64,000 bases of DNA, taken from sequence record NC_028829.1. The stretch is one strand, 5' to 3'. The notes beneath the pieces are model-generated. The model was given only the letters and a program-made list of their open reading frames with translations, was not told where the DNA came from and searched no databases. A program made the translations under genes and the position numbers. This document shows positions 564-62,882 of the stretch, piece by piece (within the stretch, counting starts at the first letter, position 1; the number at the start of each line of letters is the position of its first letter).

Positions 564-592
564 ATTATAAGTCCGAATTACTTATATTAAAC
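564..592 (-). promoter_or_regulatory. Early promoter for the queD-like gene
   Basis: GTTTAA-17 bp-TATAAT on the minus strand. Confidence 0.55.
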
Positions 593-5216: not shown

Positions 5217-5396
5217 TTACTGTTCTGAATATCTAACACCTTTGAGAAATGCCTCAAGGCAATATTCATTATACGATTCGTAAACAACTTGACCGTTGTC
5301 TTTTATCTGCCAGAGTGATTGATTGTGTTCGTCAATTTCTTCGTTCAGAATGAACCCTTGACGTTCAACCATATCTCGTATTTCATGCTTTCTCAT
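5217..5396 (-). CDS. 59-aa hypothetical protein missed by the ORF track
   Basis: GAGGTTATTATG start, MRKHEIRDMVERQGF...LKGVRYSEQ; same RBS/start string as at 5187. Confidence 0.65.
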   Translation of the reverse strand: MRKHEIRDMVERQGFILNEEIDEHNQSLWQIKDNGQVVYESYNEYCLEAFLKGVRYSEQ

Positions 5397-5440
5397 AATA
5401 ACCTCGTTTTAGAGTGGCGACAATCGCCGCCACTAAATCA

Positions 5441-6817
5441 TTAAAGTACGCGCCCACCGCAATGTTCGCCCTTATCAATCTTAGAGCGTACGTACGGAAC
5501 ACGCTCTTCGCTCAAATCTTTCCAGTATTGATCTGTGTTCGGTGTTGAGTTATGACCGTAGCCGTAGTTATGACCGATTTCGTGTAAGAATACGCGAGTG
5601 TTGTGGTCGTAGTTTGCAAGATCGTACATCTTCGACTCAGACTTGGTGTTTGCCGCCCATGCGAAAATCGCAAAGGTTGTGTGTTCGTCGTATGACGGTG
5701 CAACACCGTAAATTGAAGTGACGCCACCTGAATAACCAGGTGCAGGTAAGTAACCTTCATCGCCTGTCATGATCATGTTCGCACGGCACGACTCGAAGTT
5801 GTTATTGAACCCTGCATATGCTTTCATCGACGCGCCGATCAATGCGTTTTCACGCTGCATCTTCAAAATCTCAATTGCACGCACTGAACTGTATTCATAC
5901 AGTGGAATACGACCTTCCAAGTGAGGGAAGTTTCTCAGGTCATCAGTCTGCGGTGAGTAAGTCTGATATAGACCAGAACTGTTACCAGTCAGAATCGGTT
6001 CAATTAAGCCTAGTTTGTAACCAACTTGTACTGAGTTCGAGTTCACTTGTTTTTGCCATGTTTCCCACCACTTCGGGTCTGCCATGTGGAAGTATGATAG
6101 ATTACCATCACCACCCATCCCGGGGATTAATGTCGCGTTCACCATCAAGTACGGACGGTCAAACGTCTTATTCGCTTGATCAATCGATGTCTTGATGCTT
6201 GATAGATCTTCAGTTGTGTGTAACCAGTTCAACGCTTTAATCCAGAAGCCTGCCAGATCACCACCGTAGTTCATGTCGTTAACTGTGTAACATACACGTT
6301 TACCGAGCTGATAACGACAGCTCTCGCGGCGTAAGTTTGCCCAACCCACATCAAGCGAGCCGTTTACATCAAACTTGCTTGAGTCTGCATTCATGCGAAG
6401 CGTGTATTCAAAGCCGTTATCAAAACATGCGCTACCTGATACAGAACATGCCCACTTCAATGGTGCCATAGCAAGTGTACTAAGAGCACGCATATCATCA
6501 CTTGGTGACATTGTACGCATGTCTGTTGAATCTTTCCAGAACCCGTAACCGTTACTGTCCATCGAAATGTAAGTGCTATTGACGGTCTGACTGATTTCAC
6601 CGGTTTTCTTATACTCAGCGTCAGCTTCTTGCATCGCGCTGTTTAACCAGGTACGTAACACTGAGTTGTGATAACCGTTCGTCATATGAGGGAACGTGAA
6701 CTCAGTTGTGAAAGGACTCGGTGTTTCGACACCTTCAGCCGGTAGTCCCGTGAATGTAGCCGCTGTCGTTGACGCAGTAGAACATAACAATGCTAATGAA
6801 AGCCAAAGTTTTTTCAT
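5441..6817 (-). CDS. Secreted metzincin-type zinc metallopeptidase
   Basis: Sec signal peptide MKKLWLSLALLCSTASTTAA; HEIGHNYGYGH fits HExxHxxGxxH. Confidence 0.7.
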   Translation of the reverse strand: MKKLWLSLALLCSTASTTAATFTGLPAEGVETPSPFTTEFTFPHMTNGYHNSVLRTWLNSAMQEADAEYKKTGEISQTVNSTYISMDSNGYGFWKDSTDMRTMSPSDDMRALSTLAMAPLKWACSVSGSACFDNGFEYTLRMNADSSKFDVNGSLDVGWANLRRESCRYQLGKRVCYTVNDMNYGGDLAGFWIKALNWLHTTEDLSSIKTSIDQANKTFDRPYLMVNATLIPGMGGDGNLSYFHMADPKWWETWQKQVNSNSVQVGYKLGLIEPILTGNSSGLYQTYSPQTDDLRNFPHLEGRIPLYEYSSVRAIEILKMQRENALIGASMKAYAGFNNNFESCRANMIMTGDEGYLPAPGYSGGVTSIYGVAPSYDEHTTFAIFAWAANTKSESKMYDLANYDHNTRVFLHEIGHNYGYGHNSTPNTDQYWKDLSEERVPYVRSKIDKGEHCGGRVL

Positions 6818-6892
6818 TTTATACCTATATTTTTAAGTTTTATTTTTATCTGTACAACCTAACCAGACGTGAATTGCAGTACATCGCTGCAA

Positions 6893-6940
6893 TGTGAAAC
6901 TAGTATAGCATCATGTCGTTGATATTAAACTAGTTTCACA
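6893..6940 (-). promoter_or_regulatory. Promoter enclosed by a perfect 12-bp inverted repeat
   Basis: TGTGAAACTAGT (6893..6904) and ACTAGTTTCACA (6929..6940) bracket GTTTAA-17 bp-TATACT on the minus strand. Confidence 0.6.
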
Positions 6941-6946
6941 ATCTTT

Positions 6947-8894
6947 TTAAATTCGTTTACCCCATTCAGAGAAGTCACGACCAGTCCAAATGAACTCGCG
7001 GTTGGTCAACTCTTCGATAGCTTTTTGAGTTGGTTCGAATGTAAATACGTCACCGATATATTCATAGCCGTACTTCGCTTTTGCTGCAATTTCTCGCATT
7101 TCAGCACCTTTTTTCAGCACTTCAGCTTCGCTTTTCGCGATGATGTAACCATCTGGTCGAGTGCCCCAACCATGCTCAACTTCAGTTACAAGTGCACCGT
7201 AACAGACAATCTTTGTTTCAAAACTCATGATAAACCTCTTACTTTGATGTTTTCATACACAGGCGCGACTTTTTCAAACACGACTGATTTAATCGTTGGT
7301 TGATTGTTGTCGATGTTAATCGCATTGATGAACGCAACTATACCGTCAATCGTGTTGAATTCCATTGATTCGAACCCAATCACATAACGACATTTCACTA
7401 GACGCCATTTGCCTTGCTTTTCAAGTGCAATGTAGTTCGATTGGCATGCTTTAGACAACCCCATACCCGATAGATCATAATCTTCGTCTCTCAACGTAGT
7501 ATCAGCTACGATTGCAGTGCGTGGGTTTTGATAATCAACATATAATACAATTTGTTGCATTAAATTTCTCTCATTTTAGAAATGTTTTGCCAGAATTTCG
7601 TTTGCTCGATCTTACATATGATAAACAGAATAAACATAACAATTGACACTAGTAGTGTACCGATAAACCCATATAACATGACCATAATCATGGGTATATT
7701 GTATGTTCGTTCGAATATTATATGCAGACCCATGAAAATCGCGATGATGTTTGAAATTACAAACGTGATAATGAACATAAGAAATAAAAATTCGCCCATG
7801 AGATTAACCCTCGTACTTGTATGTGTAATCTGGTGTTGGTCGAATGAAATCACGACCTTGACGTTGACCTACTAACCAAATTTCTTGAGCACAAGACTCG
7901 CAGTAATACGCTCTCATTGCAACGTTATACGAGCTTGCACCGGGCTTTTGACACTGAGTTACGTTACAGTCGCCGCCTTTCTTACCTTTACGAACATTGC
8001 GTTTAGCAAGGTCAATCATTGCTTCATGACGCTCACGAGAACCTAGACGTTCAATGCGCTCACGTTCATGAATGCGATCCATGATTTCTGCTTGCTTCTT
8101 GGCAGTTTCGTGCATCTTTGACCACTCTTTATCATAGTCGCGTGGCTTGTTTTTCTTTACTTTACGCAATTTGCCGTTGATTACTTGATATGCCATGATT
8201 AAGCTCCGTATGCTTCAATTAGTTGTTGGCGTTTTGCTTGGCGACGTTTCTCTTCTTTCGCTCGCTTCTTAGCAAGAATATCGTTGATTCGAGAACTCAC
8301 GAGATTTGAAATTGCACTGCAAAGTGCTTTCTCTTCGTTATTGGTAAACACGTTTGCAGGCGTCGCGAGACGCATCAATTCGCCAGTATAGCGAAAATCT
8401 TGATACTTCACAACGAATTTCACATCAGTATCACGATCAATTAGCACAATTGAATCATTATTCTCACTAACACACATTTCATTGTTGACGTACTTTGCAA
8501 CGTGAAAACGCTTCGGTTTATTCAGCATCTTGTCGATGATTGCAAGGGTCGGCTCTTCAACACCATAGTCGTAATCAAGATACGTCTTAGTCACGTAATT
8601 TGCGTATTCAGCTTTGCGCTTTATAATTTCTTTCGCTACGCTCGACCAAGTACCTTCGATTTTGTCACAATCATCACGAACATCATGAGACCAATAAGAA
8701 CGTCCGTACTCGGATGCATGTCGCTTACTCACGAACATAACAAATCGTAGTTTGCGTAGATGTGTGTCAGTCAGATAACCGAGAAGTGGTTTACCATTTG
8801 AACCTTTAATTTTAAAGCCGTCTAGATTCACAGACGGCTTTTGAAGCTCATCATGGAAGATGTCGTACACATATTTGCGAGCTGCATTAGTCAT
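6947..8894 (-). other. Early operon of five hypothetical ORFs (8199..8894, 7804..8196, 7560..7853 membrane, 7225..7560, 6947..7228)
   Basis: Translationally coupled ORFs downstream of the early promoter near 8926..8954; 7804..8196 has CxxxC and CxxC motifs. Confidence 0.65.
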
Positions 8895-8971: not shown

Positions 8972-10027
8972 ATGATTATTTTTGAAAGCGTTCAATCGCA
9001 GCGTGCATTAGAGTACGCATCTAAGTTTATCGTCGATAAGCTTGAAACACAATTAGAAGCTGCTCTGAGTAGCCCACCATTCGACCCGAACAAACTCGCA
9101 CTTAATACCAAGAATCTGAACATCAAAACTGGTGAAACTGAGTTCGATGCGCTTCTTGCGCGTGGTATCGTTGCTTATCTTAAACTTGATAACCAAAACC
9201 CGACGGAAATGGGTGTTTGGCGTGGTGCTTTACATGACCCTGAAGCTAGCGAAGCGGGAAATCTGCAAATCACCGTTGATATCACTGGTGTTACCGCGGT
9301 AAGTCAAATCATGGCTAAGTTCAGAGTCAAGAAAGAGCAAATGTACAGCACTGCATTGCATGAACTGCAACATGCTTATGATAACTGGCGTTCTGGTGAT
9401 ATAGAAGACTTCGAGACACGCGACGAAGAGGGTGTGTATCAACACTCAGGGCGCAATAGAGCTTACATCGACAAAGAGTTCATCCGTCACGCTAAAAGCG
9501 GACACAAAGCGACTCACGACGAATATCAGAACTATTCGCATGAGATAAACGCTCGTTATGCTCAAGCTATCGCCGATACTAAAGCAGATTTTAAAAATTC
9601 ACCAGCTACTGCTCAGGCATGGATTAATCGATTTAAACACAACTTTGATGGGTGGGAAAATATACCAAGTGATGCTAAGAAACGATTGATCTCACGTGCG
9701 GGTGCTGAACACAGCGAGTCGAGACAGCCGTTCAAAGGTAAAGAAAGTAGTTTGAAGTATTCGTTGAAAGGATTTGATGTAAGATACACCAGAGATCAGA
9801 AATTTAGTAAGATTGGTTATTGGTTTAGTCAGTTTAAATACGACGGTCGCAACTCTAGTGATTTACTAGATAAACTTGAGCTACTAGCACATAAAACTGA
9901 AGGTGTCGTTGCACTACCACTCGATGACATACGAGCAAACCCAGCATTATTCGCTGAAATGCGCAATCGCATGAATCTAGGTACGTGGGAGAGAATGGGG
10001 TCGAATCACATGATTTACCGACCATAA
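8972..10027 (+). CDS. Zincin-like metallopeptidase-domain protein, possibly virion-internal
   Basis: ALHELQHAYD plus a downstream Y...HEINAR motif; opposite orientation to its neighbours; MIIFE start shared with 39511. Confidence 0.65.
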   Translation: MIIFESVQSQRALEYASKFIVDKLETQLEAALSSPPFDPNKLALNTKNLNIKTGETEFDALLARGIVAYLKLDNQNPTEMGVWRGALHDPEASEAGNLQITVDITGVTAVSQIMAKFRVKKEQMYSTALHELQHAYDNWRSGDIEDFETRDEEGVYQHSGRNRAYIDKEFIRHAKSGHKATHDEYQNYSHEINARYAQAIADTKADFKNSPATAQAWINRFKHNFDGWENIPSDAKKRLISRAGAEHSESRQPFKGKESSLKYSLKGFDVRYTRDQKFSKIGYWFSQFKYDGRNSSDLLDKLELLAHKTEGVVALPLDDIRANPALFAEMRNRMNLGTWERMGSNHMIYRP

Positions 10028-31392: not shown

Positions 31393-32167
31393 TACTGCTC
31401 CTTAGTATCGACCTGAATCTTTAAATGGTCGATGATGAATTGAAATTGTGTATGTGTTGAAAATGGAAGAATCTTACCATCTTTCTGAGCGTGAAGCTTC
31501 AGTTCATGACGATCTTCAGCAATCAATAGTGTATCGCGAGTATGCTCGACTTCTTGAAAGTCAGTGTACATTACATCAACGTTTAATTGCTTACCGAGCG
31601 TATCAAACCAAGCGCGTTGTTGTTCAGCAATAACCGAAACTTTGCTCAAAACGGCAATGAATGAAATCTTTTGATTTAAGAGAAAATCAAGGACAGCAGT
31701 TGACGGTAGACGCTCATAAAGCTTGACTTCAATTGCTTTATTGAGTACGTTGTCACGCTCTTTTTTCTCAAGCTGGTCGATTTGAGGCGCACCTGCAATT
31801 GCAAACCCAAGAGTGTCATCAGATAGAATGTTGCTCGTTTCAATATAAATCATAATGTTTCCTTCAATGTTTGAGTATTATATCTAACAAATACGAGCAG
31901 TTAAACTATTCGTTTTGCTCGTTTTGCTCGTTCTGTAAGTGCATCTGAGAATTCCGCTTCTAATGTTTCTAATGTATCGTCTAATGTTACAGTAACAACA
32001 CACATAGAGTCAAGAAGAATAAATGTCACTTTTTCTTCGTCTGTCTTGATTGTTAAATCTTCGTCAGGCATAATCATGAATTCTCGCGACCAGAATGCGA
32101 AAGACGTAGCAGGGCAGTCTAGCATATCACGTACAGTAGTAAGACGAATTGATTCAGTAATCATCAT
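31392..32167 (-). other. Two hypothetical ORFs (31901..32167, 31392..31853)
   Basis: ORFs with RBS; TTTAAC-17 bp-TATAAT promoter at about 31877..31905. Confidence 0.6.
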
Positions 32168-36087: not shown

Positions 36088-36141
36088 TTCTTCACCTCGA
36101 CCTATATTATACGTCTGCCAAGGTGGTTATTAAACAAATCT

Positions 36142-42233: not shown

Positions 42234-42296
42234 AATTAACCCAAAAAAGCCCCGACAGGAGCTTTATTATATGATGAATGTAAGACGTGTTAAACT

Positions 42297-61881: not shown

Positions 61882-62882
61882 TTACCTGCCATCCCGCAAA
61901 AACATCAATATTGAGGCGACAAGATTTTTTGATACCATCATTCGATACATGAACAATATTTTTGTTCATAGCTTCGCGTCGAGAAAATGTAAACGGTACA
62001 TCATCTGCAACAACTGTGATGAAATCATCATTACAAAACACAACTGTTGCTTCTTCTTGTCTCGGCTCGAATTGACAGTTCAAGTATACGTCAATCGTGT
62101 CACCTTCGTTGATACGAACATATTCCATCTTCGTTTCAATCGTTTCTTTATTGTATGACAGCACACCGTCGTGATTAAACAATTCTTGAAACGTTTCTCG
62201 TTCTTCAAAACGTGAAATGATACCAAAGCTAGAATTATCGCTGACTCGACTGCCTTGAACAATAAACGTCAAAGAACTCATATAATCATACAAAACACAG
62301 TCGCCAGTTTCGTCTTGATATATAAATCGAGCATCTATAGTATCACTCGCACTTAAACTCAAGCTGCTACTACTCATAGGTTCGACGTATACTCTAACAT
62401 CTTTACCAATTTCTAAAGCTGTCGGCGTGTATGTAGGTATTCTTCGTTCTTTTTGCGTAAACATTTTAAAACTCCCAATTTATTTTAGACGTGTGACCAT
62501 GTACTAACGTCCAACAGCCGCCCCGAACCCATTGACCAGACAACTTACGGCGATAGTATTTGCCACCCGTTGATGTCGTGATCATCTTCATTGTTTTTGA
62601 AATCTTCGTGATTACACCGTCGGGATGACTGTCACCATTGAAACAATAGCTAACTGCATCACCTACACGTGGCTTTTTGATAATATCAAAGCGCGGCAAG
62701 CAACCTGAACCTGCGTCCACAACCATGTATAGATCTTGGTCGAGCATGTTGCAGACTTCAGTAACTCGCTCTAATGTTTTCCAATCTCGTCGAGATTCAA
62801 CAGTGTGACCCTCTTGGCGGCACTTTTTAGCTACTGAGTGTTCGTCGATAACGCTGCAAGTTGTCAAGTTGATGTATAGCAT
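61862..62882 (-). other. Two hypothetical ORFs inserted between nrdD and nrdG (62466..62882, 61862..62464)
   Basis: They have their own early cassette, TTGCAA-17 bp-TAATAT at 62926..62954. Confidence 0.6.

What the first reader, a model, noticed from the sequence alone, without database searches (positions are those of the whole stretch)
5441..6817. Secreted metzincin protease in a lytic phage
Seen: a Sec signal peptide, several Cys pairs and HEIGHNYGYGH near the C-terminus. Established: HEVGHNYGLGH is the active-site string of M66 mucinases (E. coli StcE, Vibrio TagA). Inference: a host-derived or novel periplasmic or secreted protease that might clip receptors (superinfection exclusion), degrade biofilm or mucus proteins, or assist lysis. 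Secreted proteases are rare cargo in T4-like phages.
Basis: partly seen in the sequence, partly recalled or inferred. Interest (0 to 1): 0.65.

Follow-up and report, generated by a model that had tools for sequence, protein, structure and literature searches.

The report
Orphan exported zinc-protease-like phage protein
A T4-like Vibrio phage carries an early-expressed accessory gene for an exported, cysteine-rich protein that ends in a zinc-protease motif. It has no relatives outside about a dozen vibriophages, so it is probably a new kind of phage-made envelope or extracellular protease, but neither its fold nor its activity could be confirmed.

Summary
Window 5441-6817 (-) is ORF152 of Vibrio phage ValKK3, a 458-aa protein. 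It has a Sec-type signal peptide, six conserved cysteines in the mature part, and HEIGHNYGYGH at aa 412-422.

E. coli StcE does carry HEVGHNYGLGH, but the similarity covers 13 residues, and Pfam M66 scores below its cut-off. No Met-turn methionine follows the motif. The motif glycine is Asp in the phage nt-1 ortholog. AlphaFold2 failed twice (pLDDT about 30), so a metzincin fold is not shown.

An exhaustive HMMER search of representatives of 15 billion proteins found only the nt-1 ortholog (63% identical) and a 42-aa deletion remnant. "Host-derived" therefore has no support.

The gene is under purifying selection (dN/dS about 0.2) and has its own conserved T4-type early promoter. It is absent from the KVP40 clade. 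It has been deleted at least twice (phi-ST2/PVA23 and a sequencing run).

Best reading, confidence 0.55: an exported zinc metallopeptidase of an orphan, metzincin-like but Met-turn-less family, acting on envelope or extracellular proteins. The substrate is unknown. Interest is moderate.

The parts
5441..6817 (-). ORF152 coding sequence (458 aa plus stop); predicted mature protein about 437 aa, 49 kDa, pI 5.4
   Evidence: dN/dS about 0.21 against the nt-1 ortholog
6755..6817 (-). Sec-type signal peptide (aa 1-21), signal peptidase I type, no lipobox
   Evidence: Sequence inspection and hydropathy. Conserved in nt-1, where it ends ASA/F. Retained in the phi-ST2 remnant.
5948..6754 (-). N-terminal mature region (aa 22-290) of unknown fold, holding the close cysteine pairs C124/C131 and C167/C176; at least as conserved as the motif region
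   Evidence: No Pfam hit and no Atlas lead. Sliding identity to nt-1 is 62-80%.
5552..5584 (-). HEIGHNYGYGH (aa 412-422): putative zinc ligands H412, H416 and H422, and catalytic E413
   Evidence: local hits to Reprolysin_5/3/2/4, M66 and M10; MMP-12 and matrilysin motif matches
5444..5551 (-). 36-aa C-terminal tail after the third His. It contains no methionine. P426, D429, Y431, W432, D434 and C453 are invariant.
5624..5635 (-). Invariant S-K-M-Y (aa 395-398), the nearest Met to the zinc motif, but 15 residues upstream of it rather than downstream
   Evidence: any structural role is conjecture
6902..6930 (-). T4-type early promoter-like site, GTTTAA-N17-TATACT, about 85 nt upstream of the ATG
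   Evidence: The pattern occurs 5 times in the window, all on the - strand, against 0.15 expected. Both hexamers are invariant in nt-1. The T4 early consensus is GTTTAC/TATAAT (PMC1524935).
6818..6895 (-). Predicted 5' leader, with a 7-bp hairpin at 6873-6893 kept in nt-1 through a different sequence
   Evidence: folding energy is not unusual (z = -0.8)
5422..6710 (.). Segment cleanly deleted and replaced by 9 bases in phages phi-ST2 and PVA23 and in a metagenome contig, leaving a 42-aa remnant ORF
   Evidence: run X3

Best explanation
ORF152 encodes an accessory protein that is probably an exported, disulfide-bonded zinc metallopeptidase. It would be transcribed from its own sigma-70-type early promoter. 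The Sec system would export it to the periplasm of the infected Vibrio, and signal peptidase I would cut it near residue 21. Three disulfides would stabilise it.

Its C-terminal part would carry a zincin active site. H412, H416 and most likely H422 would bind zinc, and E413 would act as the general base. The site resembles the metzincin type, but the Met-turn methionine is missing and the C-terminal subdomain is minimal.

I infer that it cleaves host envelope proteins (periplasmic or outer-membrane) from early in infection. It could also act on extracellular proteins once lysis releases it. It helps the phage under some natural conditions but is dispensable for growth.

Shown: the gene, its conservation, the motif, the export-type N-terminus, the promoter-like site, and the presence/absence pattern. 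Inferred: zinc binding, proteolysis, localisation, timing and substrate.
For: - The ORF is real and under purifying selection (dN/dS about 0.21).
- The signal peptide and six Cys are invariant between two phage genera.
- The long zinc motif occurs once in the window against none in shuffles. H, E, H and H are invariant.
- Six metzincin Pfam families give local hits. The nt-1 ortholog passes the Reprolysin_5 cut-off (29.0 against 27 bits, E = 1.5e-6).
- The motif matches StcE at 10 of 13 residues and MMP-12 over HEIGHxxGxGHxSxP.
- The 36-aa tail has the length of an MMP C-terminal subdomain (my reading of the chain spans).
- An early promoter-like site is conserved in nt-1.
- There is a precedent for a phage-associated secreted metzincin that alters the envelope: Listeria Mtz/Tim (PMC8235301).
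Against: - No fold evidence. AlphaFold2 gave pLDDT 30.6 for the full length with 3 sequences and 29.7 for aa 288-458.
- All family similarity disappears when the motif is removed.
- No Met follows the motif, and the motif Gly is Asp in nt-1.
- The ValKK3 protein is below every Pfam cut-off.
- No expression data: no RNA run holds the gene.
- The gene is lost repeatedly without loss of phage viability.
- No substrate-binding or partner gene gives a hint.
Confidence: 0.55

Rival explanations
1. It is an active protease whose real site of action is outside the cell. It folds in the periplasm and is set free at lysis (or through the host type II secretion system). It then degrades biofilm matrix, debris-bound receptors or animal mucus, so that progeny phage spread.
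For: Export signal and disulfides. The host vibrios are biofilm-forming animal pathogens. The active-site helix resembles that of the mucinase StcE. Dispensability in laboratory culture fits a role that matters only in nature.
Against: The early-type promoter points to a need before lysis. No carbohydrate- or mucin-binding domain was detected. M66 membership fails. No secretion signal for the outer membrane can be recognised.
Confidence: 0.2
2. It is a diverged homolog of the M66 mucinases (StcE/TagA), picked up from a Vibrio host.
For: 10 of 13 identical residues around the zinc motif. Weak Pfam M66 hit.
Against: The similarity covers only 13-18 residues. Scores of 14.0-15.6 bits fall under the 20.6 cut-off. 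Only 36 residues follow the third His, and none is Met. No cellular relative exists among representatives of 15 billion proteins or in GTDB genomes.
Confidence: 0.04
3. It is not a protease. It would be an exported binding or structural protein (for example a blocker of a host envelope component), in which the His/Glu string binds a metal for stability or is a relic.
For: The defining Met-turn is absent and the Gly is not conserved. The large N-terminal part is as conserved as the motif region. There is no fold support.
Against: All four catalytic-type residues are invariant. The flanks match the active-site helix of several metzincin families, with one ortholog over a Pfam cut-off.
Confidence: 0.17
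4. It is a cell-wall-directed peptidase that weakens the envelope and helps lysis, as the Listeria phage-remnant metzincin Mtz does.
For: Periplasmic targeting. Precedent in PMC8235301.
Against: The early promoter-like site rather than a late TATAAATA one. No peptidoglycan-binding domain. No TIMP-like partner gene nearby. Loss of the gene leaves phages viable.
Confidence: 0.08

Closest known systems
Metzincin clan of zinc endopeptidases (MMPs, adamalysins/reprolysins, astacins, serralysins)
   Same: The HExxHxxGxxH string sits in what looks like an active-site helix with hydrophobic flanks. Asn or Asp follows the third His, as in adamalysins. Pro stands at +4 and an aromatic residue at +9, as in MMPs. 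The protein is secreted and disulfide-bonded. The tail after the third His is about as long as in MMP catalytic domains.
   Different: No Met-turn methionine: Gln or Ser stands at the MMP Met position. The motif Gly is Asp in the nt-1 ortholog. There is no detectable similarity outside about 45 residues. About 390 residues of unknown fold precede the motif. The fold is unverified.
Peptidase M66: E. coli StcE (pO157 tagA/stcE) and Vibrio TagA
   Same: Nearly the same active-site string: F-x-HE-[IV]-GHNYG-x-GH, 10 of 13 identical. The protein is secreted.
   Different: Nothing else aligns, and the score is below the Pfam cut-off. StcE has about 440 further residues after the motif, whereas this protein has 36. 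This protein has no lipoprotein signal.
Listeria monocytogenes Mtz/Tim (secreted metzincin plus TIMP-like lipoprotein of phage origin, PMC8235301)
   Same: A phage-associated, secreted metzincin-type protein that changes the bacterial envelope and phage-mediated lysis. It is the nearest functional precedent.
   Different: It comes from a Gram-positive host and a prophage remnant under a CI/Cro switch, and it has a dedicated partner protein. No sequence relation was tested or is expected, and no partner gene is present here.
T4 early periplasmic or membrane accessory proteins (Imm, Sp, RI)
   Same: These are early-expressed, exported, dispensable accessory proteins of a T4-type phage that act in the envelope (my own knowledge of T4 biology).
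   Different: They are small and non-enzymatic. None is a protease, and none shares sequence with this protein.

Membership tests
Metzincin clan | Long zinc-binding consensus HEXXHXXGXXH/D (definition: PMC9848320) | tested here: met
   HEIGHNYGYGH at aa 412-422. In the nt-1 ortholog the Gly is Asp, HELGHNYDYGH, so the Gly is not a family invariant.
Metzincin clan | Met-turn methionine downstream of the third zinc ligand | tested here: not met
   No Met in the 36 residues after H422 in ValKK3 or in the nt-1 tail. The last Met is M397, upstream of the motif.
Metzincin clan | Catalytic-domain fold: five-stranded sheet, backing helix, active-site helix and C-terminal helix | tested here: inconclusive
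   Two AlphaFold2 runs gave mean pLDDT 30.6 and 29.7. No fold search was worth running.
Metzincin clan | Zinc-dependent endopeptidase activity | not testable with these tools
   Needs biochemistry.
Peptidase M66 (StcE/TagA) | Match to Pfam PF10462 above its gathering score of 20.6 bits | tested here: not met
   14.0 bits for the full protein and 15.6 bits for the C-terminal fragment, covering profile positions 193-210 of 306 only.
Peptidase M66 (StcE/TagA) | Similarity to StcE beyond the zinc motif | tested here: not met
   The best BLASTP segment is 13 residues. All other segments have E > 1.
Reprolysin-like M12B (Pfam Reprolysin_5, PF13688) | Match above the gathering score of 27 bits | tested here: inconclusive
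   ValKK3 scores 23.8 bits, below the cut-off. The nt-1 ortholog scores 29.0 bits, above it. Both cover only about 41-52 of 196 profile positions. Nothing matches once the motif is cut off.
Sec-exported proteins cut by signal peptidase I | Positive n-region, hydrophobic h-region, small residues at -3/-1, and no lipobox | tested here: met
   By inspection and hydropathy only. No SignalP was available.
T4-type early genes | GTTTAC-like -35 and TATAAT-like -10 hexamers upstream, in the right orientation | tested here: met
   GTTTAA-N17-TATACT at 6902-6930 (-). The pattern is enriched (5 against 0.15 expected) and conserved in nt-1. Transcription itself was not shown.

The most novel reading that the evidence does not exclude
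This is the founding member of a phage-only zinc-protease family that keeps the metzincin zinc motif but has replaced the Met-turn. A T4-like phage would export it early into the periplasm to cut host envelope proteins, for example its own receptor, giving superinfection exclusion or protecting progeny from debris. That would be a proteolytic mode of envelope takeover with no described precedent.
Probability: 0.12. Interest if true: 0.8.

Novelty: new variant of a known kind. Interest (0 to 1): 0.5.

Why it matters
Exported enzymes are unusual cargo for T4-type phages, and almost nothing is known about how these phages remodel the host envelope by enzymatic means.

If ORF152 is an active protease, it gives a tractable case. 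There is a single gene with its own promoter. Two phages isolated on the same host strain form a natural plus/minus pair (phi-Grn1 has the gene, phi-ST2 has it deleted). A point mutation, E413Q, would test the activity.

For protease biology, an active enzyme with the metzincin zinc motif but no Met-turn methionine would bear on what that residue is for.

For phage therapy in aquaculture, where these phages are being developed, a secreted protease in the phage preparation is a property worth knowing about.

Tried and rejected
1. Structure prediction. AlphaFold2 on the 3-sequence alignment and on aa 288-458 alone both gave pLDDT about 30. I therefore ran no fold search, because the matches would be meaningless.
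2. Homolog searches for a deeper alignment or an origin.
- The word search found only phi-Grn1 and nt-1.
- The C-terminal domain alone found nothing at E <= 10.
- Exhaustive HMMER over 1.84 billion representatives found only nt-1 and the 42-aa phi-ST2 remnant.
- IMG/VR and GTDB genome scans found none.
- The cluster look-up found four distinct sequences in all.
- The PDB profile search found only noise.
- The ESM Atlas gave scores of 0.88 or less for the whole protein and nothing for the N-terminal part.
3. M66 membership is rejected.
4. A lipoprotein is rejected, because Leu or Val stands at -1 of C12. A GlyGly-CTERM sorting signal is rejected, because no transmembrane helix follows GG.
5. 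No late promoter TATAAATA lies near the gene.
6. The neighbours are not a dedicated partner, inhibitor or chaperone. They have no family hits and are also present in phages that lack ORF152.
7. No RNA run holds the gene.
8. The window's own assembly is not held for genome search. I did not obtain a Vibrio genome handle, so no per-genome sensitive search of host genomes was done.

Full report
**What and where**

The window is Vibrio phage ValKK3 (KP671755; Straboviridae, Schizotequatrovirus), a virulent T4-like phage of about 248 kb that infects V. alginolyticus. Window position 1 corresponds to about record position 62001. The finding is ORF152 (AJT60993.1, "hypothetical protein"), at window 5441-6817 on the - strand, 458 aa. 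PHROGs places it in phrog_18844, of unknown function. Two papers on these phages, searched by term (ORF152 or AJT60993 in the ValKK3 paper; protease/peptidase in both), do not discuss it.

**Checking the observation**

- **Signal peptide.** The N-terminus has the charge, hydrophobic core and small-residue end of a Sec signal peptide. The likely cut is near residue 21. There is no lipobox. The most hydrophobic windows of the protein are at aa 3-22.
- **Cysteines.** Six cysteines of the mature part are invariant in the 63%-identical ortholog of phage nt-1: C124, C131, C167, C176, C344 and C453. Two close pairs and one long-range pair are the obvious pairing. This fits a protein that folds in the oxidising periplasm.
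- **Motif.** HEIGHNYGYGH is at aa 412-422. The pattern HExxHxxGxxH occurs once in all six frames of the window and never in 40 shuffles.
- **StcE string.** StcE does read HEVGHNYGLGH.

**A real, selected gene**

Against the nt-1 ortholog, dN is about 0.27 and dS about 1.28 (close to saturation), so dN/dS is about 0.2. The N-terminal 260 residues are at least as conserved as the motif region. The large N-terminal part is therefore functional. It is more than a spacer.

**Family membership**

Sequence similarity to known families is confined to the zinc motif and about 20-30 residues before it.
- **Pfam, ValKK3 protein.** All hits are sub-threshold: Reprolysin_5 at 23.8 bits (cut-off 27), then Reprolysin_3/2/4, M66 (14.0 bits, cut-off 20.6) and M10.
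- **Pfam, nt-1 ortholog.** It passes the Reprolysin_5 cut-off (29.0 bits, E = 1.5e-6), but over only 52 of 196 profile positions.
- **Motif removed.** With the motif cut off, neither aa 288-409 nor aa 190-409 hits anything. The N-terminal 267 residues also hit nothing.
- **StcE.** BLASTP aligns 13 residues, 10 identical, and nothing else.
- **PDB.** The C-terminal 89 residues match only the HEIGHxxGxGHxSxP stretch of MMP-12 and matrilysin.

M66 membership is therefore tested and not met.

The metzincin clan is defined by the long motif plus a downstream Met-turn methionine (PMC9848320). The motif is present. No methionine exists anywhere after residue 397 in ValKK3, and none follows the motif in nt-1. 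At the position where MMPs have the Met (+8 from the third His) stands Gln in ValKK3 and Ser in nt-1, followed by invariant Tyr-Trp. The motif glycine is Asp in nt-1, which reads HELGHNYDYGH. From my own knowledge, Asp, like Gly and Asn, tolerates the left-handed turn conformation, so this substitution need not break the site.

The 36 residues after the third His match the length of the C-terminal subdomain of an MMP catalytic domain (my reading of the chain spans). An invariant S-K-M-Y lies 15 residues upstream of the motif. Whether it could stand in for the Met-turn is pure conjecture.

**Fold**

AlphaFold2 on the three-sequence alignment gave mean pLDDT 30.6. On aa 288-458 alone it gave 29.7. 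No fold search was sensible, so the fold is undetermined. This is the main weakness of every functional reading.

**Relatives and origin**

The word-indexed search of 5.8 billion clusters found only phi-Grn1 (98% identical) and nt-1 (63%). An exhaustive HMMER profile search of 1.84 billion representatives of about 15 billion proteins found only the nt-1 representative and a 42-aa fragment. That search was justified because the claim rests on the absence of relatives. IMG/VR and one-genome-per-species GTDB scans found none. The whole collection holds four distinct sequences.

Among 50,697 phage records, tblastn finds the gene in 12:
- ValKK3, VH7D, R10Z, R11Z, Va3, XZ1 and phi-Grn1, at 97.6-100% identity;
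- the Mylasvirus phages nt-1 and CZ01, at about 63%.

"Host-derived" therefore has no support. This is an orphan family of T4-like vibriophages.

**Genomic setting**

The gene sits in a stretch of small genes of unknown function, all on the - strand. None of its neighbours has an informative family match.

The position is the same in ValKK3 and nt-1: after the ORF153 homolog and before the ORF151 homolog. In nt-1, four small genes lie between the gene and the ORF151 homolog. One encodes a 77-aa protein with two hydrophobic segments, and another a 54-aa protein. Both have homologs in KVP40 (KVP40.0109 and KVP40.0110). KVP40 and its close relatives have those small genes but not ORF152, while ValKK3 has ORF152 but not them. 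No neighbour co-varies with ORF152, so there is no sign of a dedicated inhibitor, chaperone or partner.

**Expression signal**

An intergenic gap of 129 nt precedes the gene. It contains GTTTAA-N17-TATACT at 6902-6930 (-). The pattern GTTTAM-N16-18-TATAMT occurs five times in the window, always on the transcribed strand, against 0.15 expected. It matches the T4-type early consensus GTTTAC/TATAAT (PMC1524935). Both hexamers and much of the about 85-nt leader are invariant between ValKK3 and nt-1, although synonymous sites in the gene are near saturation. No TATAAATA late promoter is nearby. I infer early transcription by the host polymerase. No RNA data exist to confirm it.

**Dispensability**

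In phi-ST2 and PVA23, window 5422-6710 is replaced by nine bases. The promoter, the signal peptide and 15 more codons remain as a 42-aa ORF. Because a remnant is left, this is a deletion in those phages, not an insertion in ValKK3.

The same junction appears in a contig of metagenome run X3. A run labelled with a single organism (X2) holds a different deletion, 5230-6943, in its main contig. That run also holds a low-depth contig that still carries part of the gene (the stretch laid was 1,901 letters, within the operators' limit). Runs X1 and X4 hold fragments about 89-96% identical, so somewhat diverged copies exist in nature.

The gene is thus accessory. It has been lost at least twice, yet it is kept under purifying selection in two genera.

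**How it most likely works**

The most economical reading is an exported zinc metallopeptidase:
- Sec export and signal-peptide cleavage;
- disulfide formation in the periplasm;
- zinc held by H412, H416 and probably H422, with E413 as general base.

Early expression and periplasmic targeting point to substrates in the envelope of the infected cell. Release at lysis could extend its action to debris, biofilm matrix or mucus. I give 0.55 to [quoted passage not shown]. The choice of substrate is open.

Rival readings:
- a mainly extracellular role after lysis (0.2);
- a non-catalytic exported protein (0.17);
- a lysis-assisting wall peptidase like the Listeria Mtz/Tim system, PMC8235301 (0.08);
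- a true M66 mucinase homolog (0.04).

**Novelty and interest**

This is a new, very narrow family whose only recognisable feature is a known catalytic motif in an atypical form. It has no Met-turn and a non-conserved Gly, and the motif sits at the extreme C-terminus behind about 390 residues of unknown fold. It occurs in an unusual carrier, a T4-type phage, with an export signal and an early promoter. I class it as a new variant of a known kind. Interest is moderate (0.5). It is unusual and directly testable, and the phi-Grn1/phi-ST2 pair on the same host strain is a ready-made comparison. Activity, fold and substrate are all unproven.

Noticed in passing
window 564-592, 6902-6930, 31877-31906, 36106-36135, 42266-42295 (all - strand): GTTTAM-N16-18-TATAMT, a T4-type early promoter pattern, occurs five times against 0.15 expected, always on the transcribed strand. 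It could seed a promoter model for this phage group.
   Followed up: partly
window 6873-6893 (-), in the ORF152 leader: A 7-bp hairpin lies just after the predicted transcription start. nt-1 keeps it with a different stem and loop sequence. The next 25 nt of the leader are nearly invariant between the two genera. The folding energy is not unusual.
   Followed up: partly
window 8972-10027 (+): ORF158 is the only + strand gene in this neighbourhood. It is 351 aa with no signal peptide and contains an HELQH (HExxH) string. It is conserved in phi-ST2 and nt-1 (phrog_15811, unknown function) and has no significant Pfam match. It may be a second, cytoplasmic zincin-like protein.
   Followed up: partly
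window 7560-7853 (-): A small, very hydrophobic protein (97 aa from the GTG start, 79 aa as annotated) with several membrane-spanning stretches lies three genes upstream of ORF152. It is also present in KVP40. It has a weak SUR7-like Pfam hit below the cut-off.
   Followed up: no
L003 5350-5583 (phage nt-1) and L004 1767-2015 (KVP40): A protein of 77-82 aa with two hydrophobic segments lies directly after the ORF152 ortholog in nt-1 and at the same place in KVP40. It is missing from ValKK3. This short stretch gains and loses genes between close relatives.
   Followed up: partly
window 5230-6943, run X2: The main contig of a sequencing run labelled with a single organism joins 5229 to 6944, removing ORF152 with its promoter and most of ORF151. 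A low-depth contig of the same run still carries part of ORF152. The sample may hold a mixed population with and without the gene.
   Followed up: no
window 6911-6956 (-): A 10-bp inverted repeat, GTGAAACTAG ... CTAGTTTCAC, brackets the -35 and -10 hexamers of the ORF152 promoter in ValKK3. It is not kept in nt-1.
   Followed up: no
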